In this document: one piece after another, positions 26,011-44,298 of the stretch
Layout of the letters: each line of letters opens with the position of its first letter
Position numbering within the stretch: position 1 is the first letter of the stretch
IMG/VR virus record: IMGVR_UViG_3300018891_000001
Span: 151,871-215,870 of that record
Length of the DNA: 64,000 nt
Direction: 5' to 3' (one strand)
Notes under the pieces: model-generated
Database searches by the model: none
Told to the model about the DNA's origin: nothing
What the model saw: the letters and a program-made list of their open reading frames with translations, nothing else
Translations under genes and position numbers: made by a program

Positions 26011-26055
26011 TTGTAATGCATTACAAATTATATCATAAAAGTTAGGGAAAAGCAA
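26011..26055 (-). promoter_or_regulatory. sigma-A promoter with a perfect palindromic operator at +1
   Basis: TTGCTT-N17-TATAAT (TG-extended), then TTGTAATGCATTACAA. Confidence 0.75.
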
Positions 26056-26073
26056 AAAAGTTGAGGAAAATCC

Positions 26074-26616: not shown

Positions 26617-26708
26617 AATGGTACCCCCTGCACATATTTCCATAGGTTTAGTATATCGCAGGAAATAATGAGGGGGCAATTATTTATTATTTATTTTTTA
26701 TGTTTTTA

Positions 26709-27476: not shown

Positions 27477-27493
27477 TATATTGAGATTATTTT

Positions 27494-27688
27494 TTAAGTC
27501 AAAATCAATTTGTCACCTGAAATCCCTTTTTGGTGGCAAGATGGACAACAAAACCAATACTCATCCAATTTCTTGATTTCATGAGCTTCTTCAATCGTAA
27601 TAGAGCTATTACCATACTGGTAAGAAGTTTCCTTATTCCAGTTTTCAGAATCCGAAGTGTGTAAACATCGTGGACATTGAATGAGCAT
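27494..27688 (-). CDS. Small zinc-ribbon protein
   Basis: CPRC...CPSC. Confidence 0.55.
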   Translation of the reverse strand: MLIQCPRCLHTSDSENWNKETSYQYGNSSITIEEAHEIKKLDEYWFCCPSCHQKGISGDKLILT

Positions 27689-27858
27689 TCTTGATCACCT
27701 CTTATATATCTTGGGTATATCGTTCATGAATGTTAATAGAGATTCCATGGCGTTCTTCTAATTCGTTCAGAATTTCTTCTAAACGATCAATGGCTTCTTG
27801 TTCTTGGATTTTAGATGAATCAAACTCCATATACGCATGAAGATGTAGTACCGCTTCT

Positions 27859-29232
27859 TTAGACATGAGTATCCCCCTTTTGTTTGTAATAGGCTACTTT
27901 ATCTCTTAGAGATTCGTAAGACATTACAAAAAGCTCTGCATATTGTCTTGTTAAGATATCCAGTTGAATCGGATCTTGTTCTTCAGCCAATAATTTAACG
28001 ACTCTTTCTATGCGATCTCCTTGAATTTCTCCAATACGGGCATAATGATATAGGATTTCATCTTGCTGTTCTCGGTAAACTTTTTCTACTCGCCATTGAG
28101 TTAATGTGCGAGTTCTCTTTTGAATGCATTTGGAAAGAGCATCGTCTAATAAGCCATATGTGCGACAAAGTGTGTCTGGATCATGTCCATCAGGAAGCGG
28201 GCATACTTGAACAGATAATCCATGTTTCATTAAAATTAGGGCATCTTTTTCCATAGCCCGTAATCCAGCATCATCTCCATCTCTCATAAGTAATACATGC
28301 ATAGCTCCAGCTCGTTTTAAAAGTTGCACATGCTGTTCACTTAAATTGATTCCCATGGTAGAAACGGCATTACGAATACCATGTCGATGAAGCTGAATAA
28401 CATCGGTAAAGCCTTCAACAAGAGTAGCTCTTTTCCATTGAGAAATGTAGCTTTTGGCTTGGTAGATACCATACAAATAATAATTTCGATCGAACTCGGG
28501 ATAGGGATGATTTCGAAGATATTCTTTATTGACGTATTTTTCTGTTAATGGCCATCGATGATCATACTTAGGAGTGATTCGTTTTCCTTCTGCTTTTTGT
28601 TTTTCATTTAACTCCGCTAAGGCAGTAGCACCAAACGGCACACGTCCCGTAAATGAAATAATATCTCCATAATAGTCATGAATCGGAAACGTGATTTTCC
28701 CTTTGGTATTTAAAAATTCTTGGTCTTCTCCATCACCGAAACCTAATCCCCAAATGTGAATGTCTAAATCTTCAATGCCACGGTTTCGAAGATACTTATA
28801 GGCATCCGGGTGTTGAAGCAAATTCTGTTGAAATCGTTGTTGAGCACGAAGACATTTTTCTACCCACCATTGATGTTGATTTAAACGATATTGCTGCTGT
28901 GGGTCAAGAGCGGGAAGGGGTACATTGAGATATTTGGCCAACCATTCGATAGCTTGACCTAAATTGCAGTTAAAATACCCTTTAATAAAGCCGTACACAT
29001 CCGAAGATGTAGCACGGCTATGGGTTGCACTTCCCGCACCACACCCATTACATGACCACGTATTGGTTTCAGGTTTAATCATCAAACTAGGCCGATCATC
29101 ATCATGAAATGGACAATGAGCGACATAGTTAATGCCAGATGATTTTACCCCACCAATAATGGTATTGATGACTTCATGTACAGGTGCAATCGATTTAAGA
29201 TACTCCTTAAAGTCATCTGGGTACTTTGGCAC
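27859..29232 (-). CDS. dnaG: DNA primase
   Basis: CPFHDD.RPS..C.GCG Zn finger; VEGFTDV; DGDDAG; DPD; AAGGAGG SD before GTG 29232. Confidence 0.93.
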   Translation of the reverse strand: MPKYPDDFKEYLKSIAPVHEVINTIIGGVKSSGINYVAHCPFHDDDRPSLMIKPETNTWSCNGCGAGSATHSRATSSDVYGFIKGYFNCNLGQAIEWLAKYLNVPLPALDPQQQYRLNQHQWWVEKCLRAQQRFQQNLLQHPDAYKYLRNRGIEDLDIHIWGLGFGDGEDQEFLNTKGKITFPIHDYYGDIISFTGRVPFGATALAELNEKQKAEGKRITPKYDHRWPLTEKYVNKEYLRNHPYPEFDRNYYLYGIYQAKSYISQWKRATLVEGFTDVIQLHRHGIRNAVSTMGINLSEQHVQLLKRAGAMHVLLMRDGDDAGLRAMEKDALILMKHGLSVQVCPLPDGHDPDTLCRTYGLLDDALSKCIQKRTRTLTQWRVEKVYREQQDEILYHYARIGEIQGDRIERVVKLLAEEQDPIQLDILTRQYAELFVMSYESLRDKVAYYKQKGDTHV

Positions 29233-29314
29233 GGTGTTCTCCTCCTTATATTCAGTTTTCCCCAAATGCCCCGGAGGGGCCATCAAAGCATTCGTGTAAT
29301 AAAAATCTTTGTGC

Positions 29315-30300
29315 TTACTTTTCTAAATGCAATACATATTTCACTAAGTCGCTAATCTCTTTTGAAACCTTTTCACGAAATTCTGTTCGACCCAATGCTA
29401 ATGCATGGTTAGGACGATTAATATAATCATCAATGGTATCAATAATCAATTGATGCATAAACCGAATTCGATTCGGATCCAACTCATATTGTTTGACGGT
29501 TTGATTTAGTTGCATACGAGTTTCATCCAATTCTTGCTCCAAACGCTGAACCTTTTGTTGCATGCGATTTCGATCATCAATTAAATGTTGAATTAATTCT
29601 TTATTCTGTACAGTGGATAATTGTTCAGATAAATCTTTAAGATATACAACTGTTTGATGAATGGTTTCATTCATAACAGATAAAATTTCTCGATCTTCAT
29701 GTCGCAGCAATTCTTGAGCATCATGAACTTGGTTAGCCTGTTGCAAGAAACGTTCAATTTTTTCATCTAATGTTAGTTCTTTAACTTGAATTGGTTCTTC
29801 AATTTTGTTTTTTGTTAATGAAAATCCTGCATCTATAGAATGAATCTCTTTAGAAGAAATATCTTCGTTCTTATTCTCCTCTCTTGTTTCTATTTCTTCT
29901 GCCACCGTCTGATTTCCTTTTTCCTCTTTTTTGTCTTTCTTGATATGTTTTTCCAAAAACTCACGAAATCTTTCTGCACTTTCTGGTGTAAATGTATCAT
30001 GAAGTTCAATTTTTGGTTTTTCTTTCTTTTCTTTTATGTTTTCTGTTATATGTTCGTGCGCCTGATGTGGAAGACGATAAATTTTCCGTTTATATCTTCC
30101 TCGCTTTGGAGACAGTGAAAGATATCCTTCTTCGACTAATTTATTAAGATGATAATCCATTGTTGGTGCTTGTACGCCAAATTGATCTGCTAAATCTGAA
30201 GAAGAAATCTCTACTTCTCTTTCTGGGCTTTGTTCAATCATTTTGACAATTTCTCTATAAATTTGTTCTCGATTTACCTTTCGAAATGGCATGGCCACCA
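29315..30300 (-). CDS. Winged-helix plus coiled-coil protein
   Basis: SSDLADQFGVQAPTMDYHLNKLVEEGYL. Confidence 0.65.
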
Positions 30301-30399
30301 TGTAATATGCATCTCCTTTTTTCATTAGCTTCTCACATCTATAATACCATAATATCCAAGAAAAAAATAAAAAATGCAAGAAACTTAATGAATTTTTAT

Positions 30400-31596
30400 T
30401 TAAGAAAAAGAAATTACGGTAGATTCTACCACTTCAGAAGGCAATTCGTCTAAAAATCGAGAAGGTTTATAGATACGAGATTTTCCGTCTTGTTGTGATC
30501 TTTGTTCTGCCCATGTGATCAATAATTCTTTTTCTGCACGGGTAATACCAACATAAGCCAAACGACGTTCTTCTTCGATATCTTTTTCACTTTGACTTCT
30601 CCAAGAAGGAAATATGCCTTCATTCCAACCGATGAGAAATACTACTGGGAATTCTAATCCTTTTGAAGCATGCATCGTCATCAAACGAACAGAGTCTGTT
30701 TTCTTATTGTTTTCAGAATCTGTCACTAATGAAATGTCTTGTAAGAAATCTTCTAAGGTTTTATCTGGATTTTCTGTTTCATATTTATCGACAAGAATAA
30801 GAAACTCTTTTAGATTGTCAATTTTCTCATCTGCTTTCTTGTCGTTTTCATAATACGCCCAAAGACCTGATTGTTCTAATACATAACGAACATAAGTGGA
30901 CATTAGTAAGCCGCTTTCTAATTTCTTTTCAAAGTGATCGAGCAAATCGATAAATGCTGTAATTTTGCTAAGTGAACGTTTATTGATACTTGGAATGTCA
31001 CTAGCATTTTTTAAAGCTCGATACACACTGACTTTATGAATATGTGCGTATTCTTCAATTTTATCTTGAGAGGTCTTACCAATTCCACGAGATGGCTTAT
31101 TCAGAATACGCAAAATAGCTGTATCATCTTTTCGATTAAAAATCGATCTTAGATACGCAATGGCATCTTTAATCTCTTCCCGATCATAAAAACCGTGACC
31201 ACCAATGACTTGATATGGAATAAATTGATTACGGAAGAAGTCTTCAATGACTCGAGACTGGGCATTTCCACGATATAAAATGGCAAAATCCTCATATTTG
31301 TATCCATCTTGAAGAACCTTCTTTTTAATCATGGCTGCAATATAAGCGGCTTCTTGATATTCATTTCCACAACCAATGACTTTAATGGTTTCTCCTGGCT
31401 CTCTTGGTGTTCGTAATGTCTTTTCTTTTTGGTGTTTATTGTATTTTACTATTTCATTTCCTGCATGAACAATATTGCGAACAGAACGATAATTTTGTTC
31501 TAGTTTCACAACAGTAGCTTGTGGAAAATACCGCTCAAAATTCAGAATAATATTAATATCAGAACCACGGAAACCATAAATGGCTTGATAATCGTC
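30400..31596 (-). CDS. pcrA: PcrA/UvrD helicase, exon 2
   Basis: DDYQAIYGFRG, LEQNYRS, MTMHASKGLEF, EERRLAYVGITRA. Confidence 0.93.
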   Translation of the reverse strand, partial: DDYQAIYGFRGSDINIILNFERYFPQATVVKLEQNYRSVRNIVHAGNEIVKYNKHQKEKTLRTPREPGETIKVIGCGNEYQEAAYIAAMIKKKVLQDGYKYEDFAILYRGNAQSRVIEDFFRNQFIPYQVIGGHGFYDREEIKDAIAYLRSIFNRKDDTAILRILNKPSRGIGKTSQDKIEEYAHIHKVSVYRALKNASDIPSINKRSLSKITAFIDLLDHFEKKLESGLLMSTYVRYVLEQSGLWAYYENDKKADEKIDNLKEFLILVDKYETENPDKTLEDFLQDISLVTDSENNKKTDSVRLMTMHASKGLEFPVVFLIGWNEGIFPSWRSQSEKDIEEERRLAYVGITRAEKELLITWAEQRSQQDGKSRIYKPSRFLDELPSEVVESTVISFS

Positions 31597-32079
31597 CGTA
31601 AATCTTGGAATTTCATCGCATATACACTTTGACCATAATTACCAACTACATTGTAATAACCATAACAGGCTATTACAGGAAGGAAGTTGATAAATATGGG
31701 TTGGTTATCCACCAAACAAGAAGCAATGAAACGCCATTACATTGCGGTATGGCGGTAAACAACAGGTAAAGCGCATCTTTGAATACATATACAAGGATGT
31801 AACCATTTACCTTCAAAGGAAATACGAGAAATTCTCTCTGCTATTCTCATAGCAGACGAGACCATATCTTCACTCTCTTTCAAGAGGTCCGGCGCTTCGG
31901 TTGTAGGAGTTTCACCTGCACCCTACTCCCTTTCGGGATGGTCGTTACACCTTCCTCATATGAGGCTTGGCACGGGATTGTCTCTCGTTACCGAGTCACT
32001 TCCCCCGTTAGCAACGTGTCCTTCTCACGTCACACCCTGCAAGTACAGGTTCACCGGATTTAACGTGAGCTAACAATTA
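31597..32079 (-). ncRNA. Group I intron (483 nt) in PcrA motif III
   Basis: VVG|DDYQ restored on splicing; P1 GUGGGU/GCUCAC; AACGGGGGAA, AATCCCGTG, P7 GACCA/TGGTC; terminal G. Confidence 0.9.
31730..31852 (+). pseudogene. Relic C-terminus of a LAGLIDADG endonuclease, antisense within intron 2
   Basis: LRYGGKQQVKRIFEYIYKDVTIYLQRKYEKF resembles the intron-1 HEG end YRFGG...FLYNNATIYLERK. Confidence 0.7.
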
Positions 32080-32862
32080 ACCCACGACAAACAAATTGTA
32101 TTGCGGCGCAGCAAGTAATAATAATAATTGAAATTGTGCATAGTTGGCATCTTGATACTCATCACTCATGACATATTGAAATTTTCCTTGCCAATAATCA
32201 CGAGCTTCCGGATAATCACGAAGCAAAATCACTGTATTCATAATGAGATCGCCAAAATCCATTGCGTTCATTTGCTTCATTTGGAATTGATAATGCATAT
32301 ACACTTGTGCCATGACTTGCTCATCAGCTGTTTCAGCTACGTGGTATGTACAGTATTCTGGATCCCATAGATTGTTTTTGGCATTATCTATATAGCTGAG
32401 TGCATACCCAGGCTTGTATTTGTCTTGAATCCCCATTTGCTTATAAATACGCTCAATGACTTGCAAAACATCGCCTGTATCATAAATAACAAACTTGCAT
32501 CGTTTGTTTTTTTCATCTTGCTCATATCCTAATAAATGACCGTGTTTGCGTAAAATGCGTACACATAAGCTATGAAATGTACCCATCCAAATGTGCTTCA
32601 TCGGTTCTTCGCCCACTACTTTTTCTAAACGTTCTTTCATTTCCCGAGCAGCTTTATTGGTAAATGTAGCACAAAAGATATTTTTTGCTTGAATTCCTTG
32701 CGATAGCATATTAGCAATTCGAACTGTTAAGGTTTTTGTTTTACCGGACCCGGCTCCCGCTAAAACAAGAACCTGACCATTAATCGTCGTAGCCGCTTCT
32801 CGTTGTTCTGGATTAAGTTCATTAAGCATATTTGATACTTCCCATAAATTTAATGTAGACAT
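32080..32862 (-). CDS. pcrA: PcrA/UvrD helicase, exon 1
   Basis: LNPEQ, AGAGSGKT, TFTNKAAREM, GTFHS, DEYQD. Confidence 0.93.
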
Positions 32863-32882
32863 ATCCGATTTCTCCTCCCTTT

Positions 32883-33750
32883 TTATTGATCTTCTGGTGC
32901 TTCTCCATAAGGAATTTCAAGATCTTCAGTAATTTCTGTAATATTTTCTGGATAAGGGTAATCAGGAGTTTCATACACAGCACTACGAATATTTTCAATG
33001 GCTGCTTTAGATACTACATCAAAGGCCTCATCACTATCAGGCTCTACTCCTTCTGGAAGATCAACCACTACTCGGACCATGGTTTCAAGTGTAACCAACA
33101 CCGCTTTTTTAGGCATTTGGAGTCCCCCCTTTAGATTGAATTCCATAATACACAATATCTCTATTGCTCAACTGAACTATCTGCGCTTGATCAATAACCA
33201 ATAAGATTTGATGAATTTCTTGTATTTCTTCTTCCAAATGACGCTTTTTCAAATGATGAAAATCATAATCAGTGAAAAGGCCTTCCCCCGGATGTTGAGG
33301 TTTTGATTTAAACAATCTCAATAACCAATTAGTGTTTTGATACTGTTTTAATCGGTCTTCATAACGATTTATAATATTTTGGATTTGATTTTCATGATAT
33401 TCCAATTCTTCTTGTAGCTGACGCATTTTCTTCAATGCAAAAGGATAGAAATCCTTAGCAGGAATATCCACTTTCATCATAATCCCTCCTTTTTTGTGCA
33501 TAAAAAAGCAGACATGAGAAACATGTCTGCTTTTATCAGAGTGATCCTATGAATTTACTATTTCATTCATAGCATCTTCAAAACGCTTTTTAAAGCTCTT
33601 GATTTCTTGTTCACGAGCTTTCAGGTTTTCTGTTAAATTGACATGTCGAGCAGCATTGTTCCACTCTCGAACCATAGAAGCAGATTCATATTTCTTTAGA
33701 AGCTCATTAAATACTTTTTGCATTTTTGTTATATTAGCCATTTTTATCAC
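32883..33750 (-). other. Three hypothetical genes (32883-33116, 33109-33480, 33547-33741)
   Basis: ORFs with SD; terminator hairpin at 33502-33534. Confidence 0.55.
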
Positions 33751-33780
33751 CTCCCTTCAAGGAGGTGGTTTATTATCCGA

Positions 33781-35382
33781 TTACGATAAACGACGTTTCG
33801 CCTGACTAATTAATAATGGATGTACTTGGGATAATTGACGATACAACTCTTCAAACGTTTCCCGAATATCCCATTGTGCTTCTTCGGATGTGCGAAGATT
33901 GATCAAATGATAAGCTTCCCATAAATCAAAACTAGCAAATATATGACGACGATGTGCATTTAACACCACATATTCGGCTTCATTAGAAAAACCTGCTTCC
34001 ACTAGTAAATTATACAATTCTTTAGATTGTTCAGCAATGTCTTTCAAGAGATTCTCTAATCCAGCTTCTTTAATTCTTGGTGGAATGGTAATTCCGAAAT
34101 GTGGTGTTGGATTGGAAAAGACAAAATCTGTTTTCCGATTATGTCTTAATAACTGATGCCAGTTAGCTTCAGATACAAAAAATTCGACCTGATATTGGAC
34201 ATGTTTAAATTCTTCTGGTGCCATATCAAAGTGCTGCATTTCAAACAACAAATCTTTGATGATTTGTTCTTGTTTTTCTTTTCCTAAACACTTGGCTTTG
34301 TAATAAGCTGCCTTATACGGCAAATCTTCATGTTTCATCAACAATAAAGCAATAATATGCGCAATGATTTCACTTTCCATTTTGACACTGCTTAAAACCG
34401 CTGATTTAGATGAAGCGGTTATTGTGTTTCTTTCTGTAAAATGAGTTTCCATTCGTTTTTTGGAATTTCGCTGATATTGCGAAGGTGTAGCGTATTTCAA
34501 TAATACTGGTAACACCTTTGAAATCTCAGTTCGAATATCTTCAGCTAGTTTTTGAGATTCCTTGTGTTTTGAATTACCTAATACTGCGAGTGCATCTCGC
34601 CATGCTCGACCATTGGCCGTCATACCAAGTTGAGTATACATTGAAAGCGGCAAAACATAACGAGCATCTTCAAAAGCCAATTTTTCTAATACTGAATCCT
34701 TTTCTTCTGGATATGTTTTCTTGAGATACTCAAATACTCCCTTAATTAACTGCTCAAATGCATCAAACGCTTTATGAAAAAATTCTTCTACTGTTATACG
34801 AATATTTTCACTTTCTTTATCAATAGGATTATGCCATTGACCACGTTCAGGTTTTTGGTAACGCTGACTATATTCCGTAATAGATAAGAAAGAATTGGCG
34901 AGCTCTAGTTCTGCAGAAGCCAATCGAGAAATGCTTTCAATCCCCACATGAGCCACAGCATGTTCAGCAACAGAAGAATGACCATAGCCCACAGTCCACT
35001 TTTCGTGAAACTTTCTTGCCTTTTCATCGAGTTCTTTGAAGGATTCAATGCGTCCTCTAATGTCGTGGTCCTTGAGGGCGATTTGAAGATGTTGTTTAAA
35101 CGACTTGGGAGAACGTGATACCCAGGCAAATAGGGTTGCAATGAACTCTTCTGGCAATCCGACAATTGCATAAACAGGTCCATCCACGTTAGTGACATAG
35201 GGAGAAATATCAACTTCTTTTATTTGGTGTTCGTTCGGGGAAACCCCTTCACCACTTTGGCCAGTTTCGGATTCTTTTTCAGACCCTTCAAGGCGGTCTT
35301 GCTTCCGATTCCTATTCTTTTTGGAGTTTGTTTGATTTTCTTCATGGAAATCATCCTTTATTTCTTTTATTAGCTTAGACAT
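33781..35382 (-). CDS. thyX: Flavin-dependent thymidylate synthase (tandem-domain ThyX)
   Basis: YGHSSVAEH, EYSQRY, EDARYVLP, QLLRHN, LRT..AQWDIR. Confidence 0.88.
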   Translation of the reverse strand: MSKLIKEIKDDFHEENQTNSKKNRNRKQDRLEGSEKESETGQSGEGVSPNEHQIKEVDISPYVTNVDGPVYAIVGLPEEFIATLFAWVSRSPKSFKQHLQIALKDHDIRGRIESFKELDEKARKFHEKWTVGYGHSSVAEHAVAHVGIESISRLASAELELANSFLSITEYSQRYQKPERGQWHNPIDKESENIRITVEEFFHKAFDAFEQLIKGVFEYLKKTYPEEKDSVLEKLAFEDARYVLPLSMYTQLGMTANGRAWRDALAVLGNSKHKESQKLAEDIRTEISKVLPVLLKYATPSQYQRNSKKRMETHFTERNTITASSKSAVLSSVKMESEIIAHIIALLLMKHEDLPYKAAYYKAKCLGKEKQEQIIKDLLFEMQHFDMAPEEFKHVQYQVEFFVSEANWHQLLRHNRKTDFVFSNPTPHFGITIPPRIKEAGLENLLKDIAEQSKELYNLLVEAGFSNEAEYVVLNAHRRHIFASFDLWEAYHLINLRTSEEAQWDIRETFEELYRQLSQVHPLLISQAKRRLS

Positions 35383-35412
35383 ATTGCTTCCTCCTTGTTC
35401 TTAGAATGGCAA

Positions 35413-35515
35413 CGCCATCACCTGAAACCGAGAAAAGGTGGTCGAGGTGTGTCTACCCTCCTTTTTATAGATTTGTTGTATTACGCATATCAAACCTCGG
35501 TTTCACATGATGACG
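35413..35515 (-). ncRNA. Long RNA helix 1 (20 bp, 63-nt loop)
   Basis: CGUCAUCAUGUGAAACCGAG / CUCGGUUUCAGGUGAUGGCG; two G-U pairs, one mismatch. Confidence 0.6.
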
Positions 35516-35576
35516 GGCGAGCGACTCCCTCCTGCACTCGCCAGTGTTTTATGATATGAAAGCGATGAAAACAAAA

Positions 35577-36125
35577 TTACTGTACGGAAATTGCTTTCCC
35601 GTATACAAATTCTTCTACCGGAAGTTGCTCACCAGCTACAAACCAGTTTTTAAAACGATCTGGCTGAATACCTTGTGTTCCTGGTGTAGCTTTCTTTACA
35701 AGCATGGTAGTTTGACATTCATGGCAATCTACCATTTTTACTCCTTCTGGAATGTAATGGTTTCCTGTATTATTGCATTTAGGACAACGATAACGGCATC
35801 TGTAATGATTAATGCCATTTTTCACTTTAATGCCCGTGTTATAATAAGAAGGAATCTCTTGTTCTTTTTTCTCTATCTCCTCCAATGCTTCTTCCATTGA
35901 AGAAGGTTCCTTCGTAATAACAACATTGTTGGTTACATGAGTTACAGTTGGCGTTTTTTCTTCTGATATGGCATGTTCAATTTTCATTTCTTTCGGTGTT
36001 ACTGAAATTGAAAAGAAATGAAATAGGCCATCAATCATTCTGTCAATCTGTGGAGAGGTGGCTTGTTCTACTTCTAATAATGCTTGTTGATGCTTATTTT
36101 GAACTTGTAATAATACTTTAGGCAT
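35577..36125 (-). CDS. Protein with C-terminal zinc ribbon
   Basis: TGIK...YRCPKC...CHEC. Confidence 0.65.
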   Translation of the reverse strand: MPKVLLQVQNKHQQALLEVEQATSPQIDRMIDGLFHFFSISVTPKEMKIEHAISEEKTPTVTHVTNNVVITKEPSSMEEALEEIEKKEQEIPSYYNTGIKVKNGINHYRCRYRCPKCNNTGNHYIPEGVKMVDCHECQTTMLVKKATPGTQGIQPDRFKNWFVAGEQLPVEEFVYGKAISVQ

Positions 36126-36174
36126 ATCTTTTTTCTCCTCCCTTTACTTGTATTCTTCACTTGTATCGGGAATG

Positions 36175-36263
36175 GCTCCCTAGTAAGCGGAGGGAAAATG
36201 AGGTATATCTATATAAAAAGGGGCATAGGACATGAACAATGGATCCTCCGCTTACTAGGAAGC
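36175..36263 (-). ncRNA. Long RNA helix 2 (19 bp, 51-nt loop)
   Basis: GCUUCCUAGUAAGCGGAGG / CCUCCGCUUACUAGGGAGC; one G-U pair. Confidence 0.6.
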
Positions 36264-36293
36264 AGGAGAACATCTCCTACCTCCGACTGTATA

Positions 36294-36635
36294 TTACCAA
36301 GTGGTTTTCGTAGATTGAATCCGGTCTGTGACTTCATCAATATCCGTCATCATTTGTTTTAATCGTACTAACCCATCTTGCACTTGGTTTTGGCATGCAT
36401 CAATTCGATATGCAAATGCACGCAATGTTTCACGAGATGGTGGATTTGTAGATTGAGAGGCTTCCATAATTTCTTTTTCAATAGAATCAAAGCCTCTTAA
36501 TGCAGACTCAAGCATTTCAATAGCAAATTTCGCTTTATCTGCAATATGGTCAATTTTTAATGCGGTTTCTTTCGTTTTTGCATTTCCCCAATCAGAAGAC
36601 ATATAGTTTGGAGATGAATTGGATGTATAAGACAT
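36294..36635 (-). CDS. Helical hypothetical protein
   Basis: GAGGTG SD before MSYTS. Confidence 0.6.
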   Translation of the reverse strand: MSYTSNSSPNYMSSDWGNAKTKETALKIDHIADKAKFAIEMLESALRGFDSIEKEIMEASQSTNPPSRETLRAFAYRIDACQNQVQDGLVRLKQMMTDIDEVTDRIQSTKTTW

Positions 36636-36648
36636 TGCTTTCACCTCA

Positions 36649-37068
36649 TTACTTTTGATATTTGTCTGTAATTTCATCAATTTTATTAGTTAGTGCATCA
36701 ATTTCATCCGTTAAGCGGTCAATTTCATCTGTGTATTTGTCTACATCTTTAATATTTTTTTGCACTTCCTGTAGATTGCTCATGGCTCCTGTCACCTTGG
36801 ACATAATTTCTGTTGCAATCGAGCTAACCAATACTTGCACATGATCCGGCGCATTGGTTCCAATTTGTTGTACCAATCGGTCCACAAGCGGCTTGATCTG
36901 ACCTAATGTATTTTGAGCATTCGTTAATTCACGGCCACAAGAGTTCAACTCCGCATCAATTTTGTCAGATGTACGGTCAATCTTGGATTGCGTGATCTGG
37001 TCAATTTCACGAATCACTTTATCAATTTCATTACATAATTCTCGTACAGCACTTTTACCTACAATCAT
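36649..37068 (-). CDS. Helical-bundle hypothetical protein
   Basis: Heptad repeats (IDxxTxx); GGAGG SD. Confidence 0.6.
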   Translation of the reverse strand: MIVGKSAVRELCNEIDKVIREIDQITQSKIDRTSDKIDAELNSCGRELTNAQNTLGQIKPLVDRLVQQIGTNAPDHVQVLVSSIATEIMSKVTGAMSNLQEVQKNIKDVDKYTDEIDRLTDEIDALTNKIDEITDKYQK

Positions 37069-37106
37069 TTTCCGATTCCTCCTTAATGATATATGTAATA
37101 AGGGGA

Positions 37107-37205
37107 GTCACATCTCCCCCATCAACAGAAGAGGGAAAAATAAGCGGAAATCTAAGCACATGACATAAAGGGGGAATCCCTCCTCTGCTGATGGGGAAGG
37201 GTGAC
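37107..37205 (-). ncRNA. Long RNA helix 3 (~28 bp, 40-nt loop)
   Basis: GUCACCCUUCCCCAUCAGCAGAGGAGGGA / UCCCUCUUCUGUUGAUGGGGGAGAUGUGAC; three G-U pairs. Confidence 0.65.
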
Positions 37206-37412
37206 AACATCTCCTTCCCTTTTCTGTGCTACAATGTTTCTAATACATCACAAAACGTTTCTTCAATATATTGTTCTTGTTCTTGATCTGACATGTTATA
37301 GACTTCTTCAGAAACTTCCGTTGAAAAATGAACATGTCCTTGATCGTTATAAATGATTAAACGATAGCTGTCTCCAGCTTCTACTATTTCATACTGGTAG
37401 CGAACCATCAGT

Positions 37413-37628
37413 TTAATAGCCTCCTGTTAAATCACTAAAGACTGTTGTGTTGCCGCCATCATAATATTCTGGTTTCTTACCTTCATCAGTCTTCTTAGAC
37501 CCGGCATTGGCTAAAGATACCTCTAATTCTTGAGTAGCTACTACACAAGATTCACCCTGGCCATTTAATACATCAAGCTTAATTTCGCCACCTGGTTTAA
37601 TCGTGAATTTAACCTCTGTCTTTTGCAT
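37413..37628 (-). CDS. DUF2997-family protein
   Basis: F.I.P.G.I...V.NG.G.SC...T..LE..L......KKPEYY. Confidence 0.75.
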   Translation of the reverse strand: MQKTEVKFTIKPGGEIKLDVLNGQGESCVVATQELEVSLANAGSKKTDEGKKPEYYDGGNTTVFSDLTGGY

Positions 37629-37766
37629 TATAATTCCTCCCATTTAACATGTTCTCCAATTGGTAAGAAAAACTGAGTATGCGGAAATACTGTCGCATCG
37701 TTTCTGTGTTCTACCCAACCAATTTCATTGTTCCAATAGCCATCATTTGAAGAAATAATCCACATT

Positions 37767-38066
37767 TTATGAACGACGGACTCCATCTTGCGTTAACACT
37801 CCTTCATCAATGGCTTGTTGAATCACTTGAAGTATATATTCATCTTGTTCCTCATATGAAACATTTAAAAATATTTCATTATTCCATTGAGGTAAGTCTC
37901 TAACATCAAATGAATAATCTCCGTTATCAGAACATTTCACATGATATCCAAACCAGAAAGTACGATAACCTTCTTCCATGTAATCATTTTTGTAGATATG
38001 GTAAATGGTGACATCATTATGAACTAAGGCGATTTCAGGTTCTACCCATTGATATTGGTATGGCAT
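37767..38066 (-). CDS. Hypothetical protein
   Basis: GGAGG SD. Confidence 0.55.
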   Translation of the reverse strand: MPYQYQWVEPEIALVHNDVTIYHIYKNDYMEEGYRTFWFGYHVKCSDNGDYSFDVRDLPQWNNEIFLNVSYEEQDEYILQVIQQAIDEGVLTQDGVRRS

Positions 38067-38112
38067 TCATTCTACCTCCTTACAAGCGGGAGTTTTACTC
38101 CCGCTTTGATTT

Positions 38113-38496
38113 TTACGCAAATGAAGAAGCTAAAATTTCGATTTCGCCTTTTTCATTAATGCTGATATCATCAATGCTCCAACGATTTTCTTCACATGCA
38201 TCCATGACTTGATATTTGGAATGCAACTGAGAAATCTTGTTCGTAAATTCTTTTTCAGACCAAGGAAGCACATACCAATCGGCTTGCAATTGCAATTCAT
38301 TAGTTTCTGTATCACGAACCCAACCAAGAGGTAGTACTTTGCCATTTTTGACAACAGCCAGTTCCGCTTTTCTTGTTTGACCATACCAGTCGGTAATCGT
38401 TGCATTTTCTTTGTAATCAAGTCCCATTTCTTGGAGTCCTCGTTTTACATACTCCATATTAGATACATTACATGTGTAGACTGCAAAATGTGACAT
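38113..38496 (-). CDS. DUF1257 (Ycf35-like) protein
   Basis: MSHF start; L..MG; lG.....; ADWY; GEIEI. Confidence 0.75.
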   Translation of the reverse strand: MSHFAVYTCNVSNMEYVKRGLQEMGLDYKENATITDWYGQTRKAELAVVKNGKVLPLGWVRDTETNELQLQADWYVLPWSEKEFTNKISQLHSKYQVMDACEENRWSIDDISINEKGEIEILASSFA

Positions 38497-38551
38497 CTGT
38501 ACATCGTTCCTTTCTTTCTAAGATTGATTTATTTTAAAGAGCTTTGGCTCT

Positions 38552-38941
38552 TTAATCCTGTTTAGGGCGTGAAAGATATTTTTGAGCCACCTTTTTTAGC
38601 AATTCAATACGTCGCTCTTGAGAAGCTTTCACTTGTCGATAAACTTCTTCTGGCATTTTTTCTGTTTCTTCTTTGGTGTAATTTTTTTCAATCAAGTACT
38701 TCAGATTTTGAATCTTTTTTTGCATATCTTTCATAAAGGATTCTTTGATAAATTGAAAGACTTCTAAATGCTCAATTCGTTGAATAAATTGACGGAACTC
38801 ATTTTCTAACTCCTGAGTTTCGTCCAATGCCAACATAACAGCACGTTCAAAATTTTGTTGTTTATTGTATTGAACTTCATAATGAGAAAACTGTTGTAAT
38901 ATTTCCTGTACTTTTTTCCTTTGTTGATCTTTGTCATGCAT
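38552..38941 (-). CDS. Hypothetical coiled-coil protein
   Basis: ORF within the operon. Confidence 0.55.
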   Translation of the reverse strand: MHDKDQQRKKVQEILQQFSHYEVQYNKQQNFERAVMLALDETQELENEFRQFIQRIEHLEVFQFIKESFMKDMQKKIQNLKYLIEKNYTKEETEKMPEEVYRQVKASQERRIELLKKVAQKYLSRPKQD

Positions 38942-38952
38942 GATAGCACCCC

Positions 38953-40584
38953 TTATCCTAAATCAAGGTCCGGAAAATCTACCTCAACCAATTTTGCTTT
39001 GGTATCAGCAGCGGCATGCAACAATTTATGTTCTTCACTAGAAGCACATTTAGCAGAATGTTTTGCCCAATTACGAAGATTAGTTAACAATTCCGGATTT
39101 CGCTTAGATAATGGAACAATCTTCGAAATTTGTCCTAGTAAATCCTCTTGACGAATATAATGAGTAGCTCGATTGCCTTTTCGATAATCGGCATATGCTC
39201 GTCTACCTGCCTCCGATACAACTTGTTCGATTTCAGCACCAGTAAAATCCTCAGAGTTTTTAGCCAATTCTACAATTTGCGCCTCACTAAAGCAGTTTTC
39301 TTCTTGAGAGACATTACAAATTTTATATCCACGTTTTGTTAAATGAATTTTATAGATTTCTTCCCGTTCAGTCTGAGCAGGAAGTGAGACGAAGAAAATA
39401 TCATCAAAACGACCTGCACGAGTTAGTTCTGCAGGAAGCTTTGTAATATCGTTCGCTGTTGCAATAACGAATACTGGAGCCTCTTTATCAGAAAGCCATG
39501 TCAATAACGTCTGAATGACACGAGAAGTCGTGCCTCCATCCGATTTATCCGAAGAAGACATACCGGCTAATGCCTTTTCAAATTCATCTATCCATAACAC
39601 GCAAGGCGATACACTTTCCGCTAATTTCAATGCACGGTCAATATTCTTTTCTGATTGACCTACTTTAGAATCCATAATATCGCTCATGTTCATTTTCAAA
39701 AGCGGTAAATTCCACATATGAGCAACTGATTTGGCTGTTAAAGATTTTCCGACACCCGGAAATCCAGCTACAACAACTCCACGAACCGGATCAATGCCAT
39801 ATTCTTTTGCTTCATGTTCAAATGCATATTGAGCATCAGCAAACCAGTCTTTTAATATATCCATACCACCAACATGGTCCATGTTTCCTAATTTTGTAAC
39901 ATACTCTAATAGACCAGTCTTTTTAATGACTTGTTCTTTTTCAGCGACAATTTCGTCTAGTACAATCTTTTTATGTTTAGCAACGGACTTTTTTAGTACA
40001 TTGATAATTTCTGATTTCGTCATTCCAATTAATGCATTAATAATCGCTACACGATCACGGCCTTCTGGAACTGGTAAATCTTTTGAAAGAAGAAAGGTTT
40101 CCATGCCACGAAGCTGTTCTTCTACTTGCTCACGAGTTGGTAATTCATAAGTAACAACTGTAATAAGTTTTTCTAGTTCCATCGGAATATTAATTTGCGG
40201 AGATACCAAAAGAATCGGCTTATAGATATTATCCTGTTTTTCCAAAATATCACGAAGACGACGCTTTGCTTGGAAATTTGTCCAGATGTCATGAAAATCC
40301 TTGATAACAAATGCAGCTGGCTTATCGTAATTCTCAATAAAATCCAACAATTTTACAGGATCATATAGTTTTTGAAATAGATCATTTGTAATTAAATCTT
40401 TTAATCCAGATGTAATACTCCATGTATAAGATTCAATACCTTTTGCCTCAATAATGGTTTTTAAGTCCTCTTGAAACCGTTCTTCCTCGAATGTATGGAC
40501 TAAAATAGAACGACGACGGGAATTCATTAATGTTGAAATTTCCTCAATACCAGTCATTTTCTTAACAATTGCCTGCGACATCAT
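38953..40584 (-). CDS. Ycf46-like AAA+ ATPase
   Basis: T.EE.R, KDFH, VGGMD.LK.W, GFPGVGKS, IDEFEK, RAGRFD, FTGAEIEQ. Confidence 0.88.
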   Translation of the reverse strand: MMSQAIVKKMTGIEEISTLMNSRRRSILVHTFEEERFQEDLKTIIEAKGIESYTWSITSGLKDLITNDLFQKLYDPVKLLDFIENYDKPAAFVIKDFHDIWTNFQAKRRLRDILEKQDNIYKPILLVSPQINIPMELEKLITVVTYELPTREQVEEQLRGMETFLLSKDLPVPEGRDRVAIINALIGMTKSEIINVLKKSVAKHKKIVLDEIVAEKEQVIKKTGLLEYVTKLGNMDHVGGMDILKDWFADAQYAFEHEAKEYGIDPVRGVVVAGFPGVGKSLTAKSVAHMWNLPLLKMNMSDIMDSKVGQSEKNIDRALKLAESVSPCVLWIDEFEKALAGMSSSDKSDGGTTSRVIQTLLTWLSDKEAPVFVIATANDITKLPAELTRAGRFDDIFFVSLPAQTEREEIYKIHLTKRGYKICNVSQEENCFSEAQIVELAKNSEDFTGAEIEQVVSEAGRRAYADYRKGNRATHYIRQEDLLGQISKIVPLSKRNPELLTNLRNWAKHSAKCASSEEHKLLHAAADTKAKLVEVDFPDLDLG

Positions 40585-40639
40585 TAATTCCTCCTTAATA
40601 AGTGCTTTTTCCGATAAATGTCCCGGAGGGACGCTTTCC

Positions 40640-41782
40640 TTACAAATCTAAATCAATATCCGAGAATTGCTGCACCAATTTTTCTTCTTTCTGTTTGTTT
40701 TTGCTTTCTTCTAAAATAAGTAAACGACTAGAACGGTAACGTTCATTATTCGTTTCGTATAAAGGGCTTGACTTATCAAGGCCTTCTAATAATGATTTTG
40801 TTTCCTGAGCAGATACAACCATTGAATAAGAAGGATGTTGTTCATTAAAAATATCAATGGCTAATTGATACTTTTCGATATCTATTGATGCCTGTTCTGC
40901 ATTTAACGCCACAGTTGTTTTTTCTCCTGCAACTAATGAATAAATAGATTGTTGCTCTAAAGAATAATAACGAAATTCAAAACGATTACTGTCGGCTAAA
41001 TCCTCAAACATACGACCTACCAAAAGAATACCGTAAATGTGAACAATAGAACGATTTCTTTCGTAGGTGTACTCCAAAGATTCGAAAGTTCCTACATCTT
41101 GATTTGTTTTTGTATCCCGAATGATTCCAATTCCTTGGTTCCATTGATACGATTTGTTAATATGGGCGTAATACTTTCCTTCATTCCATGAACGATTAAT
41201 AAATTGTTCAAGAAGCATATAGACGGTATCCCGAAATTCCGGCACCTCTTCAAGACGTTGGCTTTTAATTTCATGAATCGCTTTAAAGAGCATTTCCTCA
41301 AATGATTGCAAAGAAAGAGTCGCTATCTCCTCCATATTTAATTTGTCATTTCGAGCCTTTACATAAATCTCATTTTTCTCAGCATCCCCATGCAGCGATA
41401 TATCTATCTTAAATTTTTCAGATCCAATCATATCTTCCAGGTACTCAGCATCCACTACAATTTTATTAACCAAATTAATATCAACATAATCGTTTTCGCC
41501 GGTTTTTGGATTATACACTGGCATTCGCAAACCCTCCCATACTTCTTTGATTATATTTTTAGACGATAATGCTGATGCTTTAGAAAGAATTTCATATACC
41601 CCTTGTGGTATAGCTGAATCGATGCATATAGCAGAATCATGTATTACAGAATTAAAAGGAATTTCTTCAATTTCAAGAGAATCGTTTTCATATTTATCTT
41701 GAATATACCTCTGAAAATATTCCTCCAAAGAATGATTTAAATTTCTTCCTAGTCTACCCCAAGAATCAGAAGAAAAATACAT
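40640..41782 (-). CDS. Hypothetical protein
   Basis: 380-aa ORF in the operon. Confidence 0.65.
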   Translation of the reverse strand: MYFSSDSWGRLGRNLNHSLEEYFQRYIQDKYENDSLEIEEIPFNSVIHDSAICIDSAIPQGVYEILSKASALSSKNIIKEVWEGLRMPVYNPKTGENDYVDINLVNKIVVDAEYLEDMIGSEKFKIDISLHGDAEKNEIYVKARNDKLNMEEIATLSLQSFEEMLFKAIHEIKSQRLEEVPEFRDTVYMLLEQFINRSWNEGKYYAHINKSYQWNQGIGIIRDTKTNQDVGTFESLEYTYERNRSIVHIYGILLVGRMFEDLADSNRFEFRYYSLEQQSIYSLVAGEKTTVALNAEQASIDIEKYQLAIDIFNEQHPSYSMVVSAQETKSLLEGLDKSSPLYETNNERYRSSRLLILEESKNKQKEEKLVQQFSDIDLDL

Positions 41783-41783
41783 G

Positions 41784-42617
41784 TTAGACTTCTCCTATTA
41801 AAGTCATCTCTTTTTGTCGCTGTTCATAGCGAATGGAGCAAGTCTTGTTGCAAAACGATAAATCTGAAGTAAGAATATGTCCACAACATTTGCAGGTACG
41901 AGCATTCTGCATCTGTTGATTGTATTCATCTGCATATAAAAATTTAAGTTCTCCCATACGGATACTTGCAGGACCGAAGATGACACGCTGATTGGAAGAA
42001 CCAATAAACCAACCTTCATGCATATATGCATTGGTTGTTAAACGCTTATCTTGCTGATAATCACCGTCTACAATCATATCTATATAAAGCATGAGCTCCT
42101 TTACATCTTCTGGTGTTAAAATGGTAAATTCTGCTTTCTTAGCAGTAAGTGTCCAATTTGTTGTTATTGCCCGATCAAAGCACTGATAGGAATGAGAATA
42201 CCTTAATAAAGCGTCAAACATGGCCTTTCCATGCTTTTCACGAATCCATGTGAATTTCAACCCATACTTCATCAGAGTATCTAATTTATAAGCAGTGTAC
42301 ATTACAAAATGAAACGTAGGATCGATGTCTTTTAACCGTTTCGCTACTTTTGCAATAGCTCTGGCTTGAAGTATCGGTTCACCTCCACAGAATGTGACTT
42401 GCCGATTCCAAGCCGTTTTTACACATATATCGACTACTTCATCAATAGTCATTTCTCGATATAATCCTTCAAAAGTCCATGTACTCTCATTAAAGCAACC
42501 TTGACAGGGAGAAATGACTCCACGAATACAGCCTTTCGTGAAAAACTCTAACCGTTTTCCCGGCCCAGCTGTCGTTGTATCACGATTTACACCAATAAAA
42601 CGTAAAATATCAGACAT
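41784..42617 (-). CDS. Radical SAM protein (NrdG/activase-like)
   Basis: GPG.R..F..GC..(x7)C..CFN; VTFCGGEP; DMIVDG.Y; GSSNQR. Confidence 0.8.
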   Translation of the reverse strand: MSDILRFIGVNRDTTTAGPGKRLEFFTKGCIRGVISPCQGCFNESTWTFEGLYREMTIDEVVDICVKTAWNRQVTFCGGEPILQARAIAKVAKRLKDIDPTFHFVMYTAYKLDTLMKYGLKFTWIREKHGKAMFDALLRYSHSYQCFDRAITTNWTLTAKKAEFTILTPEDVKELMLYIDMIVDGDYQQDKRLTTNAYMHEGWFIGSSNQRVIFGPASIRMGELKFLYADEYNQQMQNARTCKCCGHILTSDLSFCNKTCSIRYEQRQKEMTLIGEV

Positions 42618-42631
42618 ATTTATTCACCTCA

Positions 42632-42696
42632 TGTAAGGCATTACAATGTAACGCCTTTCATAATGTTAGTATAGTCAAAAACTTGGGGAAATACAA
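42632..42696 (-). promoter_or_regulatory. sigma-A promoter with two downstream operator copies
   Basis: TTGTAT-N17-TATACT; TGTAAGGCATTACA and TGTAACGCCTTTCA. Confidence 0.65.
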
Positions 42697-43289
42697 GGGA
42701 AAAGCCACGAATTTTTGAGAAAAATTTTATTCGTGGCAAAAAAACTTAGAGATTTATCATTCTTCTTCAAGTATTTCTTCTATTTGCTCTAAAATAAAAT
42801 CATACAATTGTGTATCACTCATATGATTAATGTGACGAAATTTAGTTTGGTACCCTGTTTTTTGATCAATTAAAATTAGTTCTACATTTTCTCCATATTC
42901 TTCAATGTCATCGTATGAGATTCCCTTGTGCGGAGGATGCTGCAGTAAAGAACAATTCACAGTGGTTTTGGCTACAATTTGAATAGAAAAGCGTTCATTG
43001 ATGACTTCCCATAATTCATTCATTGTAGCAATGTCACCTTACCTAAACGAAATGACAATTCTTTTTGAACTTCTTTCGCTTTTTCTATTTGAGATTGAAC
43101 ATAATCCCAATTTCGAAGTTTCACTCCATCTTTCGCTCGTGTTAAGCAATCATCTAAAAGAGTCAACAAGTGTTCATTATTAAGATTTTGAAATTTTTTA
43201 TGCATACAAACTCCCTCCTAGAATCTCTTTATATGACATCAATACAATGTATGAAAAGAAAAAGGCTCACATGACTGCGAGCCTTTTTA

Positions 43290-44281: not shown

Positions 44282-44298
44282 TTTAAATTCCCCCTTGA

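What the first reader, a model, noticed from the sequence alone, without database searches (positions are those of the whole stretch)
35413..37205. Three long intergenic RNA helices clamping variable anti-SD loops: candidate processed small-RNA cassettes
Seen: three nearby intergenic gaps each hold a 19-29 bp inverted repeat (35413-35515, 36175-36263, 37107-37205) around an unrelated 63-, 51- or 40-nt loop. Six of about eight imperfections are G-U pairs only when read on the transcribed - strand, which points to selection on RNA. None is followed by a U tract, so they are not terminators. All share an inner edge GAGG...UUUUC(C)(C)UC, and two are preceded by AGGAGAUGUU. The loops carry anti-SD tracts (CCCCUUUUUAU, CCCCCUUUAU, CACCUC, CCACCUUUU). 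Loop 2 contains the exact reverse complement of a plausible initiation region, AAAAAGGGGCATAGGAC-ATG-AAC-AAT-GGA. Established: such helices are RNase III-sized. Inference: an operon-embedded array from which antisense RNAs with exchangeable guide loops are excised to silence host or competitor mRNAs.
Basis: partly seen in the sequence, partly recalled or inferred. Interest (0 to 1): 0.82.

Follow-up and report, generated by a model that had tools for sequence, protein, structure and literature searches.

The report
Conserved intergenic RNA hairpins in jumbo phage
Three long RNA hairpins between genes of a large Bacillus-type phage are real, conserved through compensating mutations in related phages, and most likely mark where a long phage messenger RNA is cut and stabilised, not a set of swappable antisense guide RNAs.

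Summary
The three inverted repeats exist as described. They are the only long, low-G-U helices in the 64 kb (3 found; 0.2 expected from shuffles). They sit in three consecutive gaps of a terminator-free minus-strand operon of a 216-kb phage.

Related phage contigs hold the same elements. el2 and el3 belong to one family ("type A", 13 members in 9 contigs): a 19-25 bp helix in which 14 of 19 pairs show compensatory changes. G-U outnumbers A-C 25 to 2. The box AGCAG/CUGYU is almost invariant, a U-G wobble is common (7 of 12) and the base is CUUCC/GGGAG. el1 is a second type, with three orthologues. No Rfam family matches.

The loops are not unrelated or exchangeable. All close type A loops share UGUCAUGUCC. 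In relatives this is followed by CCUCCUUUC, identical to the 16S rRNA tail as I recall it; that tract is decayed in this window. AGGAGAUGUU is not conserved; different small hairpins take its place.

Best reading (about 0.4): cis-acting double-strand processing and stability elements, cut by RNase III, like the T7 and SP82 sites. Rivals: a protein-bound leader of the adjacent zinc-ribbon gene, an excised anti-SD small RNA, or antitermination. Cleavage itself is untested.

The parts
35405..35542 (-). el1, type B element. It has a 5' flank hairpin (35542-35516, with GGAGGGAGUC in its loop) and a main helix 35515-35495 / 35433-35413. The loop has an inner hairpin AAAAGG../..CCUUUU and a CACCUC tract. 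A small 3' hairpin lies at 35419-35405. It sits upstream of the ThyX-like gene.
   Evidence: Orthologues in L045 and L065 show 3 compensatory pair changes and repair of the G.G mismatch. The whole gap is about 85% identical to L045.
36168..36284 (-). el2, type A element. It has a 5' flank hairpin (36284-36258, overlapping the helix base) and a main helix 36263-36245 / 36193-36175. The loop carries the conserved motif UCAUGUCCU at 36235-36227. A 3' flank GGGAGCCAUUCCC can refold on the base of the 3' arm. It sits upstream of the 182-aa zinc-ribbon gene.
   Evidence: Covariance model R1 scores 61.4 bits on the sense strand and 32.4 on the antisense strand.
37102..37219 (-). el3, type A element. 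The main helix is 37199-37177 / 37136-37114, with an outer 5 bp at 37205-37201 / 37111-37107 and GGGA.../...UCCC beyond. The loop motif UCAUGUGCU is at 37163-37155. It sits upstream of the 139-aa coiled-coil gene. It lacks the ~80-nt module that follows its orthologue in L045.
   Evidence: R1 scores 61.4 bits on the sense strand and 27.5 on the antisense strand.
35577..36125 (-). 182-aa zinc-ribbon protein gene (CxxC...CxxC, PHROG 19181, function unknown). In every related contig where covariance model R1 found a hairpin, a type A hairpin lies directly upstream of its homologue, whatever the upstream neighbour. 0305phi8-36 and SP-15 also carry a homologue but gave no R1 hit.
   Evidence: The structure model is of low confidence and has no significant PDB match.
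26055..43288 (-). Context: a stretch of the - strand between two strong intrinsic terminators (43288-43259 and 26083-26055). No strong terminator lies between them, so it is a candidate ~17-kb transcription unit that contains the three elements.
   Evidence: Gene content is: AAA ATPase, DUF1257, DUF2997, ThyX, UvrD helicase, primase.

Best explanation
The three elements are cis-acting structured RNA signals inside a long phage polycistronic mRNA. Each presents about two turns of near-perfect double-stranded RNA.

Proposed mechanism (inferred, not shown):
1. The host double-strand-specific endonuclease RNase III cuts within the conserved AGCAG/CUGYU part of the helix and separates the neighbouring cistrons.
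2. The small GC-rich hairpin just 5' of the helix then caps the 3' end of the upstream fragment.
3. The downstream fragment starts a few bases before the conserved polypurine GGGAG. That tract can refold with the 3' flank or bind a 30S subunit, which would protect against 5'-to-3' decay by RNase J1.
4. The net effect is that stability and translation of adjacent genes are set independently.

Shown here: the helices exist, are under selection as RNA on the sense strand, and are conserved in position and length across related phages. Inferred: the nuclease, the cut site and the consequences.
For: (1) Statistics and strand bias.
(2) Covariation. Type A: 12 sequences, 14 of 19 pairs with compensatory changes. 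In the 7 close sequences 96% of cells are paired and 0 of 500 shuffles reach this. Type B: 3 compensatory pairs.
(3) Helix length stays at 19-25 bp in all 16 elements, while loops range from about 4 to 63 nt. This suits a reader of double-stranded RNA, not of a loop.
(4) Invariant helix positions and a U-G wobble near the base in 7 of 12 members. PMC11780869 reports that B. subtilis RNase III cuts long-range helices with up to 505 nt between the cuts, and that U-G wobbles are enriched in the distal box.
(5) The elements are operon-internal, with no promoter and no U tract.
(6) Precedent in a Bacillus phage: SP82 early RNA carries Bs-RNase III sites with internal loops, cut on the downstream side (PMC1935012, PMC4838370). 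A 5' polypurine stabiliser from that RNA was described by Hue et al. 1995; the title is cited in PMC3997798 and its content is from my memory.
(7) Stems are 83-95% identical to the L045 orthologues, against 53% at third codon positions.
Against: - No cleavage data exist.
- The conserved single-stranded loop motif UGUCAUGUCC(UCCUUUC) and the conserved downstream module in relatives are not needed for a plain RNase III site.
- The strict association of type A hairpins with one gene (the zinc-ribbon protein) suggests a gene-specific leader.
- The invariance of AGCAG/CUGYU is stronger than the weak sequence preferences known for RNase III.
- I could not compare with the actual SP82/SPO1 site sequences.
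- SD occlusion by the elements is not consistently predicted.
Confidence: 0.4

Rival explanations
1. Gene-specific cis-regulatory leader or operator. A phage protein, possibly the adjacent 182-aa zinc-ribbon protein itself, binds the helix and the loop motif and controls translation or decay of the downstream gene.
For: A type A hairpin lies directly upstream of the zinc-ribbon gene homologue in every contig where model R1 found one, although the upstream neighbour differs. Helix bases are invariant and the loop motif is conserved. In relatives a conserved ~60-nt module follows the hairpin.
Against: Copies also precede unrelated genes: the 139-aa gene, a 341-aa gene in L048, and ThyX via L065_b. 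The helix is far longer than typical protein operators. The zinc-ribbon model shows no significant similarity to RNA-binding proteins. 0305phi8-36 and SP-15 carry the gene without a model hit.
Confidence: 0.22
2. RNase III releases the upper hairpin as a small RNA. Its loop, an anti-SD tract that mimics the 16S rRNA tail together with UGUCAUGU, pairs with ribosome-binding sites in trans or with the downstream SD in cis.
For: The loops of L045_el3, L065_a, L065_b and L066 carry CCUCCUUUC or CUCCUUUC. This is identical to the 16S tail as I recall it, and shuffle p is <=0.01 for three of them and 0.047 for L066. The motif is single-stranded in the predicted folds. C-rich loop seeds are typical of Firmicute sRNAs, and DicF is an sRNA cut out of a prophage operon (both from my own knowledge).
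Against: In this window the anti-SD tract is decayed. The loops are not exchangeable. Some family members have loops of only about 4-10 nt. There is no enrichment of targets in the window. The host genome is not known, so host targets could not be searched.
Confidence: 0.12
3. Processive antitermination or polymerase-modifying RNA, like HK022 put or the Bacillus EAR element. It would let transcription run through the 17-kb unit.
For: The elements are intergenic and operon-embedded, structured, read on the sense strand, and lie in a long unit without terminators.
Against: There is no Rfam hit to EAR or any other family. Three copies sit within 1.8 kb. The architecture is unlike the put stem-loops (my own knowledge).
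Confidence: 0.07
4. A DNA-level feature: a cruciform or single-strand hairpin that serves as a recombination or cassette boundary, replication site or mobile palindromic element (MITE-like).
For: Gene content differs on either side of the elements between relatives. The 139/128-aa pair lies between two type A copies here and in quite different contexts elsewhere. G-T wobbles also form in single-stranded DNA.
Against: There are no target-site duplications or near-identical copies. A strict pattern scan found only el2 and el3 on the 216-kb source contig, plus one chance hit elsewhere in IMG/VR. Model R1 finds no more in the window. Positions are orthologous. Unpaired motifs are conserved. Orientation always matches transcription.
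Confidence: 0.05
5. The elements encode small proteins: a 38-aa and a 51-aa ORF starting at the ATG of AGGAGATGTT, or mini-ORFs starting at the conserved loop AUG.
For: ORF 37055-37210 (51 aa) is listed. A conserved AUG lies 9-15 nt after an SD-like tract in all seven close type A loops.
Against: The AGGAGATGTT start is absent in L045. ORFs from the loop AUG run from 3 to more than 60 codons, and in different frames in el3 and its orthologue (read). There is no Pfam hit. The SD-like tract is buried in the helix.
Confidence: 0.03

Closest known systems
Bs-RNase III processing sites in Bacillus phage SP82 early mRNA (Panganiban & Whiteley 1983; Mitra & Bechhofer 1994), with the associated polypurine 5' stabiliser (Hue et al. 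1995)
   Same: A Bacillus-type phage; several related hairpins between genes of one transcript; no terminator function; a polypurine SD-like tract just 3' of the presumed cut.
   Different: No sequence comparison was possible, because the SP82 sites were not available and the SPO1 record carries no such annotation. The present elements have large apical loops with a conserved motif. Relatives also have an extra conserved module. Cleavage is unproven.
Phage T7 RNase III sites (R0.3 to R18.5)
   Same: A family of sequence-related intercistronic hairpins in long phage transcripts. They separate cistrons and leave protective 3' hairpins.
   Different: In T7 the helix is broken by an internal loop, and the host is E. 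coli (my own knowledge). Here the ~20-bp helices are uninterrupted and carry 25-63-nt apical loops.
Long-range RNase III substrates in B. subtilis mRNAs (PMC11780869)
   Same: Helices that clamp tens to hundreds of nucleotides; a U-G wobble in the distal part of the helix.
   Different: Those are host mRNAs without a shared sequence family.
STAB-SD / 5' stabiliser elements of Bacillus mRNAs (cryIIIA, ermC, hbs; reviewed in PMC3997798)
   Same: SD-like purine tracts without a usable start codon: GGAGGGAGUC in the el1 5' hairpin loop, AAAAAGGAGGG in the el1 loop, and GGGAG at the 3' arm base.
   Different: Those act at primary 5' ends. Here they would act only after processing.
Processed prophage sRNA DicF; Firmicute sRNAs with C-rich seeds (RoxS/RsaE)
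   Same: An RNA cut out of an operon transcript; a pyrimidine-rich loop able to pair with SD sequences.
   Different: There is no evidence for a discrete RNA, the seed is decayed in this window, and there is no Rfam match.

Membership tests
Intercistronic RNase III processing sites of phages (T7, SP82 type) | Lies between cistrons of one transcript, without its own promoter or terminator | tested here: met
   No promoter-like or terminator-like site lies in the three gaps. Strong terminators are found only at 43288-43259 and 26083-26055. These are consensus scans only.
Intercistronic RNase III processing sites of phages (T7, SP82 type) | About two turns (>=~20 bp) of quasi-continuous double-stranded RNA on the sense strand | tested here: met
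   The helices are 19-25 bp with 0-1 mismatch in all 16 elements, supported by covariation and a G-U:A-C count of 25:2.
Intercistronic RNase III processing sites of phages (T7, SP82 type) | Cleaved by RNase III in vivo or in vitro | not testable with these tools
   Needs end mapping in wild-type and rnc-mutant hosts, or an enzyme assay.
Intercistronic RNase III processing sites of phages (T7, SP82 type) | Sequence relationship to described SP82/SPO1 or T7 sites | not tested
blastn of the region against GenBank phages matched only coding DNA of phage Eldridge.
Intrinsic (Rho-independent) terminator | GC-rich hairpin with a short loop, followed by a U tract | tested here: not met
   There is no U tract after any 3' arm, the loops are 40-63 nt, and the scan does not call them.
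Any Rfam 15 family (sRNAs, riboswitches, ribozymes, EAR, c4 and others) | Covariance-model match | tested here: not met
   Only generic weak miRNA-precursor hits (E 0.7-5) in the window region. Nothing matched at the homologous elements of 7 related loci.
MITE / dispersed palindromic repeat | Many near-identical copies with terminal inverted repeats and target-site duplications | tested here: not met
   The window has only el2 and el3. The 216-kb source contig has only these two by a strict pattern. The stems differ in sequence, no duplications flank them, and the positions are orthologous in L045.
Integron attC sites | RYYYAAC / GTTRRRY core sites at the ends of an imperfect palindrome, with an integron integrase nearby | tested here: not met
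   The core sites are absent on reading the sequence. No integrase was found among the neighbouring genes scanned.
Trans-acting anti-SD sRNA | Conserved single-stranded seed complementary to ribosome-binding sites | tested here: inconclusive
   The seed is strong in relatives (an 8-9-mer of the recalled 16S tail, p<=0.01) but not above composition in this window.
Trans-acting anti-SD sRNA | A discrete small RNA species and identified targets | not testable with these tools
   There are no expression data and the host genome is unknown. A motif-complement search in the window showed no enrichment.

The most novel reading that the evidence does not exclude
The hairpins are the visible part of an undescribed RNA system of 0305phi8-36-like jumbo phages. 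A double-stranded clamp presents a loop that mimics the 3' tail of 16S rRNA (UGUCAUGUCCUCCUUUC), often with a conserved downstream module. After excision this acts as a decoy or competitor for Shine-Dalgarno sequences, or as the RNA partner of the adjacent zinc-ribbon protein. Either way it would reprogramme translation during infection.
Probability: 0.12. Interest if true: 0.8.

Novelty: new variant of a known kind. Interest (0 to 1): 0.5.

Why it matters
The elements define two RNA structure families, each well supported by covariation and absent from Rfam, in a poorly studied group of jumbo phages of Bacillales. If they are RNase III sites, they extend the T7/SP82 way of organising phage operons to this group. 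They would also give clean natural substrates, with an invariant box and a recurrent wobble pair, for studying what Gram-positive RNase III recognises. If the loop motif that mimics the 16S tail is functional, it would be an unusual way for a phage to act on translation.

Tried and rejected
- A first collection pattern was mis-spaced and returned only chance hits. The corrected pattern found only the source contig plus one chance hit.
- The el1 stem pattern in metagenomes gave six unrelated matches. The module pattern in genome and viral collections gave only chance hits or none. The protein-profile scan of IMG/VR found only the source contig.
- Relatives found through the 139-aa protein, and phage Eldridge, have ordinary promoters and terminators in the gaps and no such hairpins.
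- 0305phi8-36 and SP-15 are not syntenic here and gave no model hits.
- The SPO1 host-takeover region carries no RNase III annotation, and my hairpin scan there was uninformative.
- A promoter inside the loops: rejected by the scan.
- Consistent occlusion of the downstream SD: not seen in the folds.
- Small-ORF reading: the start is not conserved.
- The structure of the zinc-ribbon protein was of low confidence (mean pLDDT 66) with no significant PDB match.
- Hue et al. 1995 could not be retrieved. The RNase III consensus letters are only in figures, so the box positions could not be mapped onto the helix.
Full report
WHAT THE WINDOW IS

The window is part of IMG/VR contig IMGVR_UViG_3300018891_000001 (215,870 bp). 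The same sequence, without a single difference over 32.6-39.1 kb, occurs in independent assemblies.

Only phage Eldridge shows DNA similarity among GenBank phages, and only over two genes. The 182-aa protein has relatives on contigs of 216-239 kb and in Bacillus phage 0305phi8-36. So this is a jumbo phage of Bacillales.

Genes around the finding lie on the - strand, in this order:
- DUF2997 protein, then a 59-aa ORF
- el3
- 139-aa coiled-coil protein, then a 128-aa protein
- el2
- 182-aa zinc-ribbon protein
- el1
- a 533-aa ThyX-like protein, then a UvrD helicase, a primase and others

On the - strand, strong intrinsic terminators are seen only at 43288-43259 and 26083-26055. The three gaps contain no promoter-like or terminator-like site.

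THE OBSERVATION

With a filter of >=19 bp, <=1 mismatch and <=4 G-U pairs, exactly these three pass on the - strand in 64 kb. Twenty dinucleotide shuffles give 0.2 on average.

They fold better on the - strand (z = -3.95, -5.95, -4.94) than on the + strand (z = -1.99, -3.64, -3.06). Apart from one G.G mismatch, every imperfection is a G-U on the - strand. None is followed by a U tract.

COMPARATIVE EVIDENCE

Relatives found through the highly conserved 139-aa protein were not syntenic and had no such hairpins.

Relatives found through the 182-aa protein were decisive. L045 is a JGI contig of 216,067 bp whose 182-aa homologue is 63% identical at the protein level. It has the same gene order and an orthologous hairpin in each of the three gaps.

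L065 and L066 are also syntenic and carry the elements in a partly different order. A more distant group carries a related hairpin directly upstream of the zinc-ribbon gene: L048 (Heyndrickxia assembly), L050/L051 (B. spizizenii assembly), L052, L067 and L069.

el2 and el3 belong to one family, which I call type A. In the 12-sequence alignment A6, RNAalifold finds a 19-bp helix in which 14 pairs show compensatory double changes. In the 7 closer sequences (A5):
- 96.1% of cells are paired.
- 12 of 22 pairs have double changes.
- None of 500 column shuffles reaches these values.
- Sliding the partner by 1-3 columns drops pairing to 47-63%.

G-U cells outnumber A-C cells 25 to 2.

A covariance model built from A6 scores 55-76 bits on the sense strand and 27-39 on the antisense strand. 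It finds no further copy in the window. It does find a new member, not used in training, in L069 (35.8 bits).

The helix has the following conserved features:
- a base CUUCC/GGGAG, in which the second U pairs with G in 7 of 12 members
- an A-U pair that is invariant, flanked by four pairs (consensus GCAG/CUGY) kept in 9-12 of the 12 members
- variable segments between these, which covary perfectly (for example TAGTA/TACTA, CCATC/GATGG, TGGTC/GACCA, TGACA/TGTCA)

el1 is a second family, type B, with orthologues in L045 and L065. These show three compensatory pair changes, repair of the G.G mismatch, and a conserved 5' hairpin whose loop reads GGAGGGA(G/A)UC.

Between the window and L045, third codon positions are 53% identical. 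Against that, the stems are 83-95% identical, the el1 loop 78%, the el2 loop 74% and the el3 loop 47%. The elements are therefore under purifying selection as sense-strand RNA.

The loops are not unrelated. All seven close type A loops carry UGUCAUGUCC (UCAUGUGCU in el3) a few bases after the 5' arm.

In L045_el3, L065_a, L065_b and L066 the motif runs on into CCUCCUUUC, CUCCUUUC or CCUCCU. That tract is identical to the 3' tail of Bacillus 16S rRNA as I remember it. Shuffle p is <=0.01 for the first three and 0.047 for L066.

In this window the tract is decayed, and the anti-SD content of the three loops is no more than their composition gives (p = 0.06, 0.25, 0.71).

AGGAGAUGUU and the UUUUC edge are not conserved. 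In the orthologues the first is replaced by other small GC-rich hairpins that abut or overlap the base of the helix:
- CAGGUG-GGCAA-CACCUG
- GAAGGGCGAUUC-UAUG-GAAUCGCCCUUC
- GGUGAUG-CGGAAA-CAUCACC
- CAGGAGG-AUUUG-CCUCCUG

So a structure is kept there, not a sequence.

The 3' flank can refold on the base of the 3' arm: GGGAG(U/C)CAU(U)CCC in the el2 type, GAUGGCGUUGCCAUU in el1, and GGGGAGAUGUGACUCCCC in el3.

Family members L048_b, L050 and L069 have loops of only about 4-10 nt. The loop is therefore dispensable for whatever the helix does.

A CONSERVED MODULE IN THE RELATIVES

In L045_el3, L065_a, L066 and the whole distant group, the hairpin is followed by a conserved ~60-nt module: GACUUUCGCCCUUUCAAACGAACCCUAUAAAUCG...AAAGGGUAGGU. 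It has a GCCCUUU/AAAGGGU stem. This window lacks the module. No Rfam family matches any of this.

MECHANISM

What is constant across 16 elements is two turns of nearly perfect double-stranded RNA. It carries fixed base pairs in the middle and, in type A, a recurrent wobble pair near the base. It is read on the sense strand and sits between cistrons of a unit without terminators. That is the substrate of a double-strand-specific reader.

In Bacillus the obvious candidate is RNase III. It cuts long-range helices that enclose up to 505 nt and shows enrichment of U-G in the distal box (PMC11780869). SP82, a Bacillus phage, has several such sites in its early RNA, cut on the downstream side (PMC1935012, PMC4838370). 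A polypurine, SD-like tract downstream acts there as a 5' stabiliser (Hue et al. 1995; the title is cited in PMC3997798, and the content is from my memory).

The conserved 5' flank hairpin and the conserved GGGAG with its refolding partner fit a model in which the two new ends are capped after the cut. I hold this reading at about 0.4.

It does not explain three things: the conserved loop motif, the module in the relatives, and the tight link with the zinc-ribbon gene. These keep alive a protein-bound leader (0.22) and an excised anti-SD RNA (0.12). Antitermination, a DNA-level role and small ORFs are less likely, for the reasons given in the rivals.

GENE ORDER AROUND THE ELEMENTS

Gene order next to the elements differs between relatives:
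- L066: hairpin plus module, then the zinc-ribbon gene.
- L065: type A copies flank that gene, and a type B copy follows.
- This window and L045: the 139/128-aa pair sits between two type A copies. Elsewhere that pair is found in replication modules, and in Eldridge it has its own promoter and terminator.

el2 may therefore be a duplicate of the ancestral leader hairpin (el3) that arose when that gene pair was inserted. This is inference.

VERDICT

The interpretation as exchangeable guide-RNA cassettes is not supported. The elements are an undescribed variant of a known kind of phage RNA signal, and their function is still to be shown by experiment.

Noticed in passing
window 21917-22212 (-): A group I intron (Rfam RF00028, 97.5 bits). 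It overlaps the 3' end of an ORF with a LAGLIDADG domain (22097-23092) and lies just upstream of the SNF2-like 808-aa gene.
   Followed up: partly
window 31838-32089 (-): A second, sub-threshold group I intron match (37.1 bits, E 9e-8). It lies between the N-terminal (32077-32862) and C-terminal (30400-31509) halves of a UvrD-type helicase. That helicase is a single 661-667-aa gene in L045, L065 and L066.
   Followed up: partly
L045 3966-4050; L065 4640-4720; L066 4693-4775; L048 4866-4945; L050, L052, L067, L069 at homologous places: A conserved ~60-nt RNA module (GACUUUCGCCCUUUCAAACGAACCCUAUAAAUCG...AAAGGGUAGGU) directly follows the type A hairpin in the relatives. It is absent from this window and has no Rfam match. 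In L065 and L066 it heads a 450-490-nt non-coding leader whose first ~180 nt are conserved.
   Followed up: partly
window 37091-37086 (UACAUA after el3); L045 4973-4985 and 4055-4068; L048 3690-3700; L050 about 4970: The hexamer UACAUA recurs between the hairpin and the next SD in several family members. It is the cleavage motif of the EndoA/MazF toxin according to PMC11780869.
   Followed up: no
window 17471-17481 (-): The only perfect 11-nt complement (AGGACAUGACA) of the type A loop motif in the window. It lies inside a 93-aa ORF (17304-17585), not at a start site. It is probably chance.
   Followed up: partly
window 38084-38106 and 33746-33769: GC-rich 9-10-bp hairpins just upstream of, or overlapping, the SD of the next - strand gene. 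They have no U tract on the - strand; the scan calls them only as + strand terminators.
   Followed up: no
window 44284-44359 (-): A 20-bp AU-rich hairpin (5 G-U, loop 34) in the gap between the ORFs 43592-44281 and 44525-45031. Model R1 does not match it.
   Followed up: no
window 36294-37068 (-); L001, L003-L009: The 139-aa coiled-coil protein is 60-86% identical across more than 100 database clusters, from phage contigs and from Paenibacillus, Priestia and Clostridium assemblies. In the six or so contigs examined, together with its ~115-aa partner, it sits in quite different neighbourhoods.
   Followed up: partly
L046 (0305phi8-36) 4359-4433 and 4879-4992: The GenBank record notes tRNA-like pseudo-elements in a 1.1-kb non-coding stretch just downstream of the zinc-ribbon gene homologue ORF061.
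   Followed up: no
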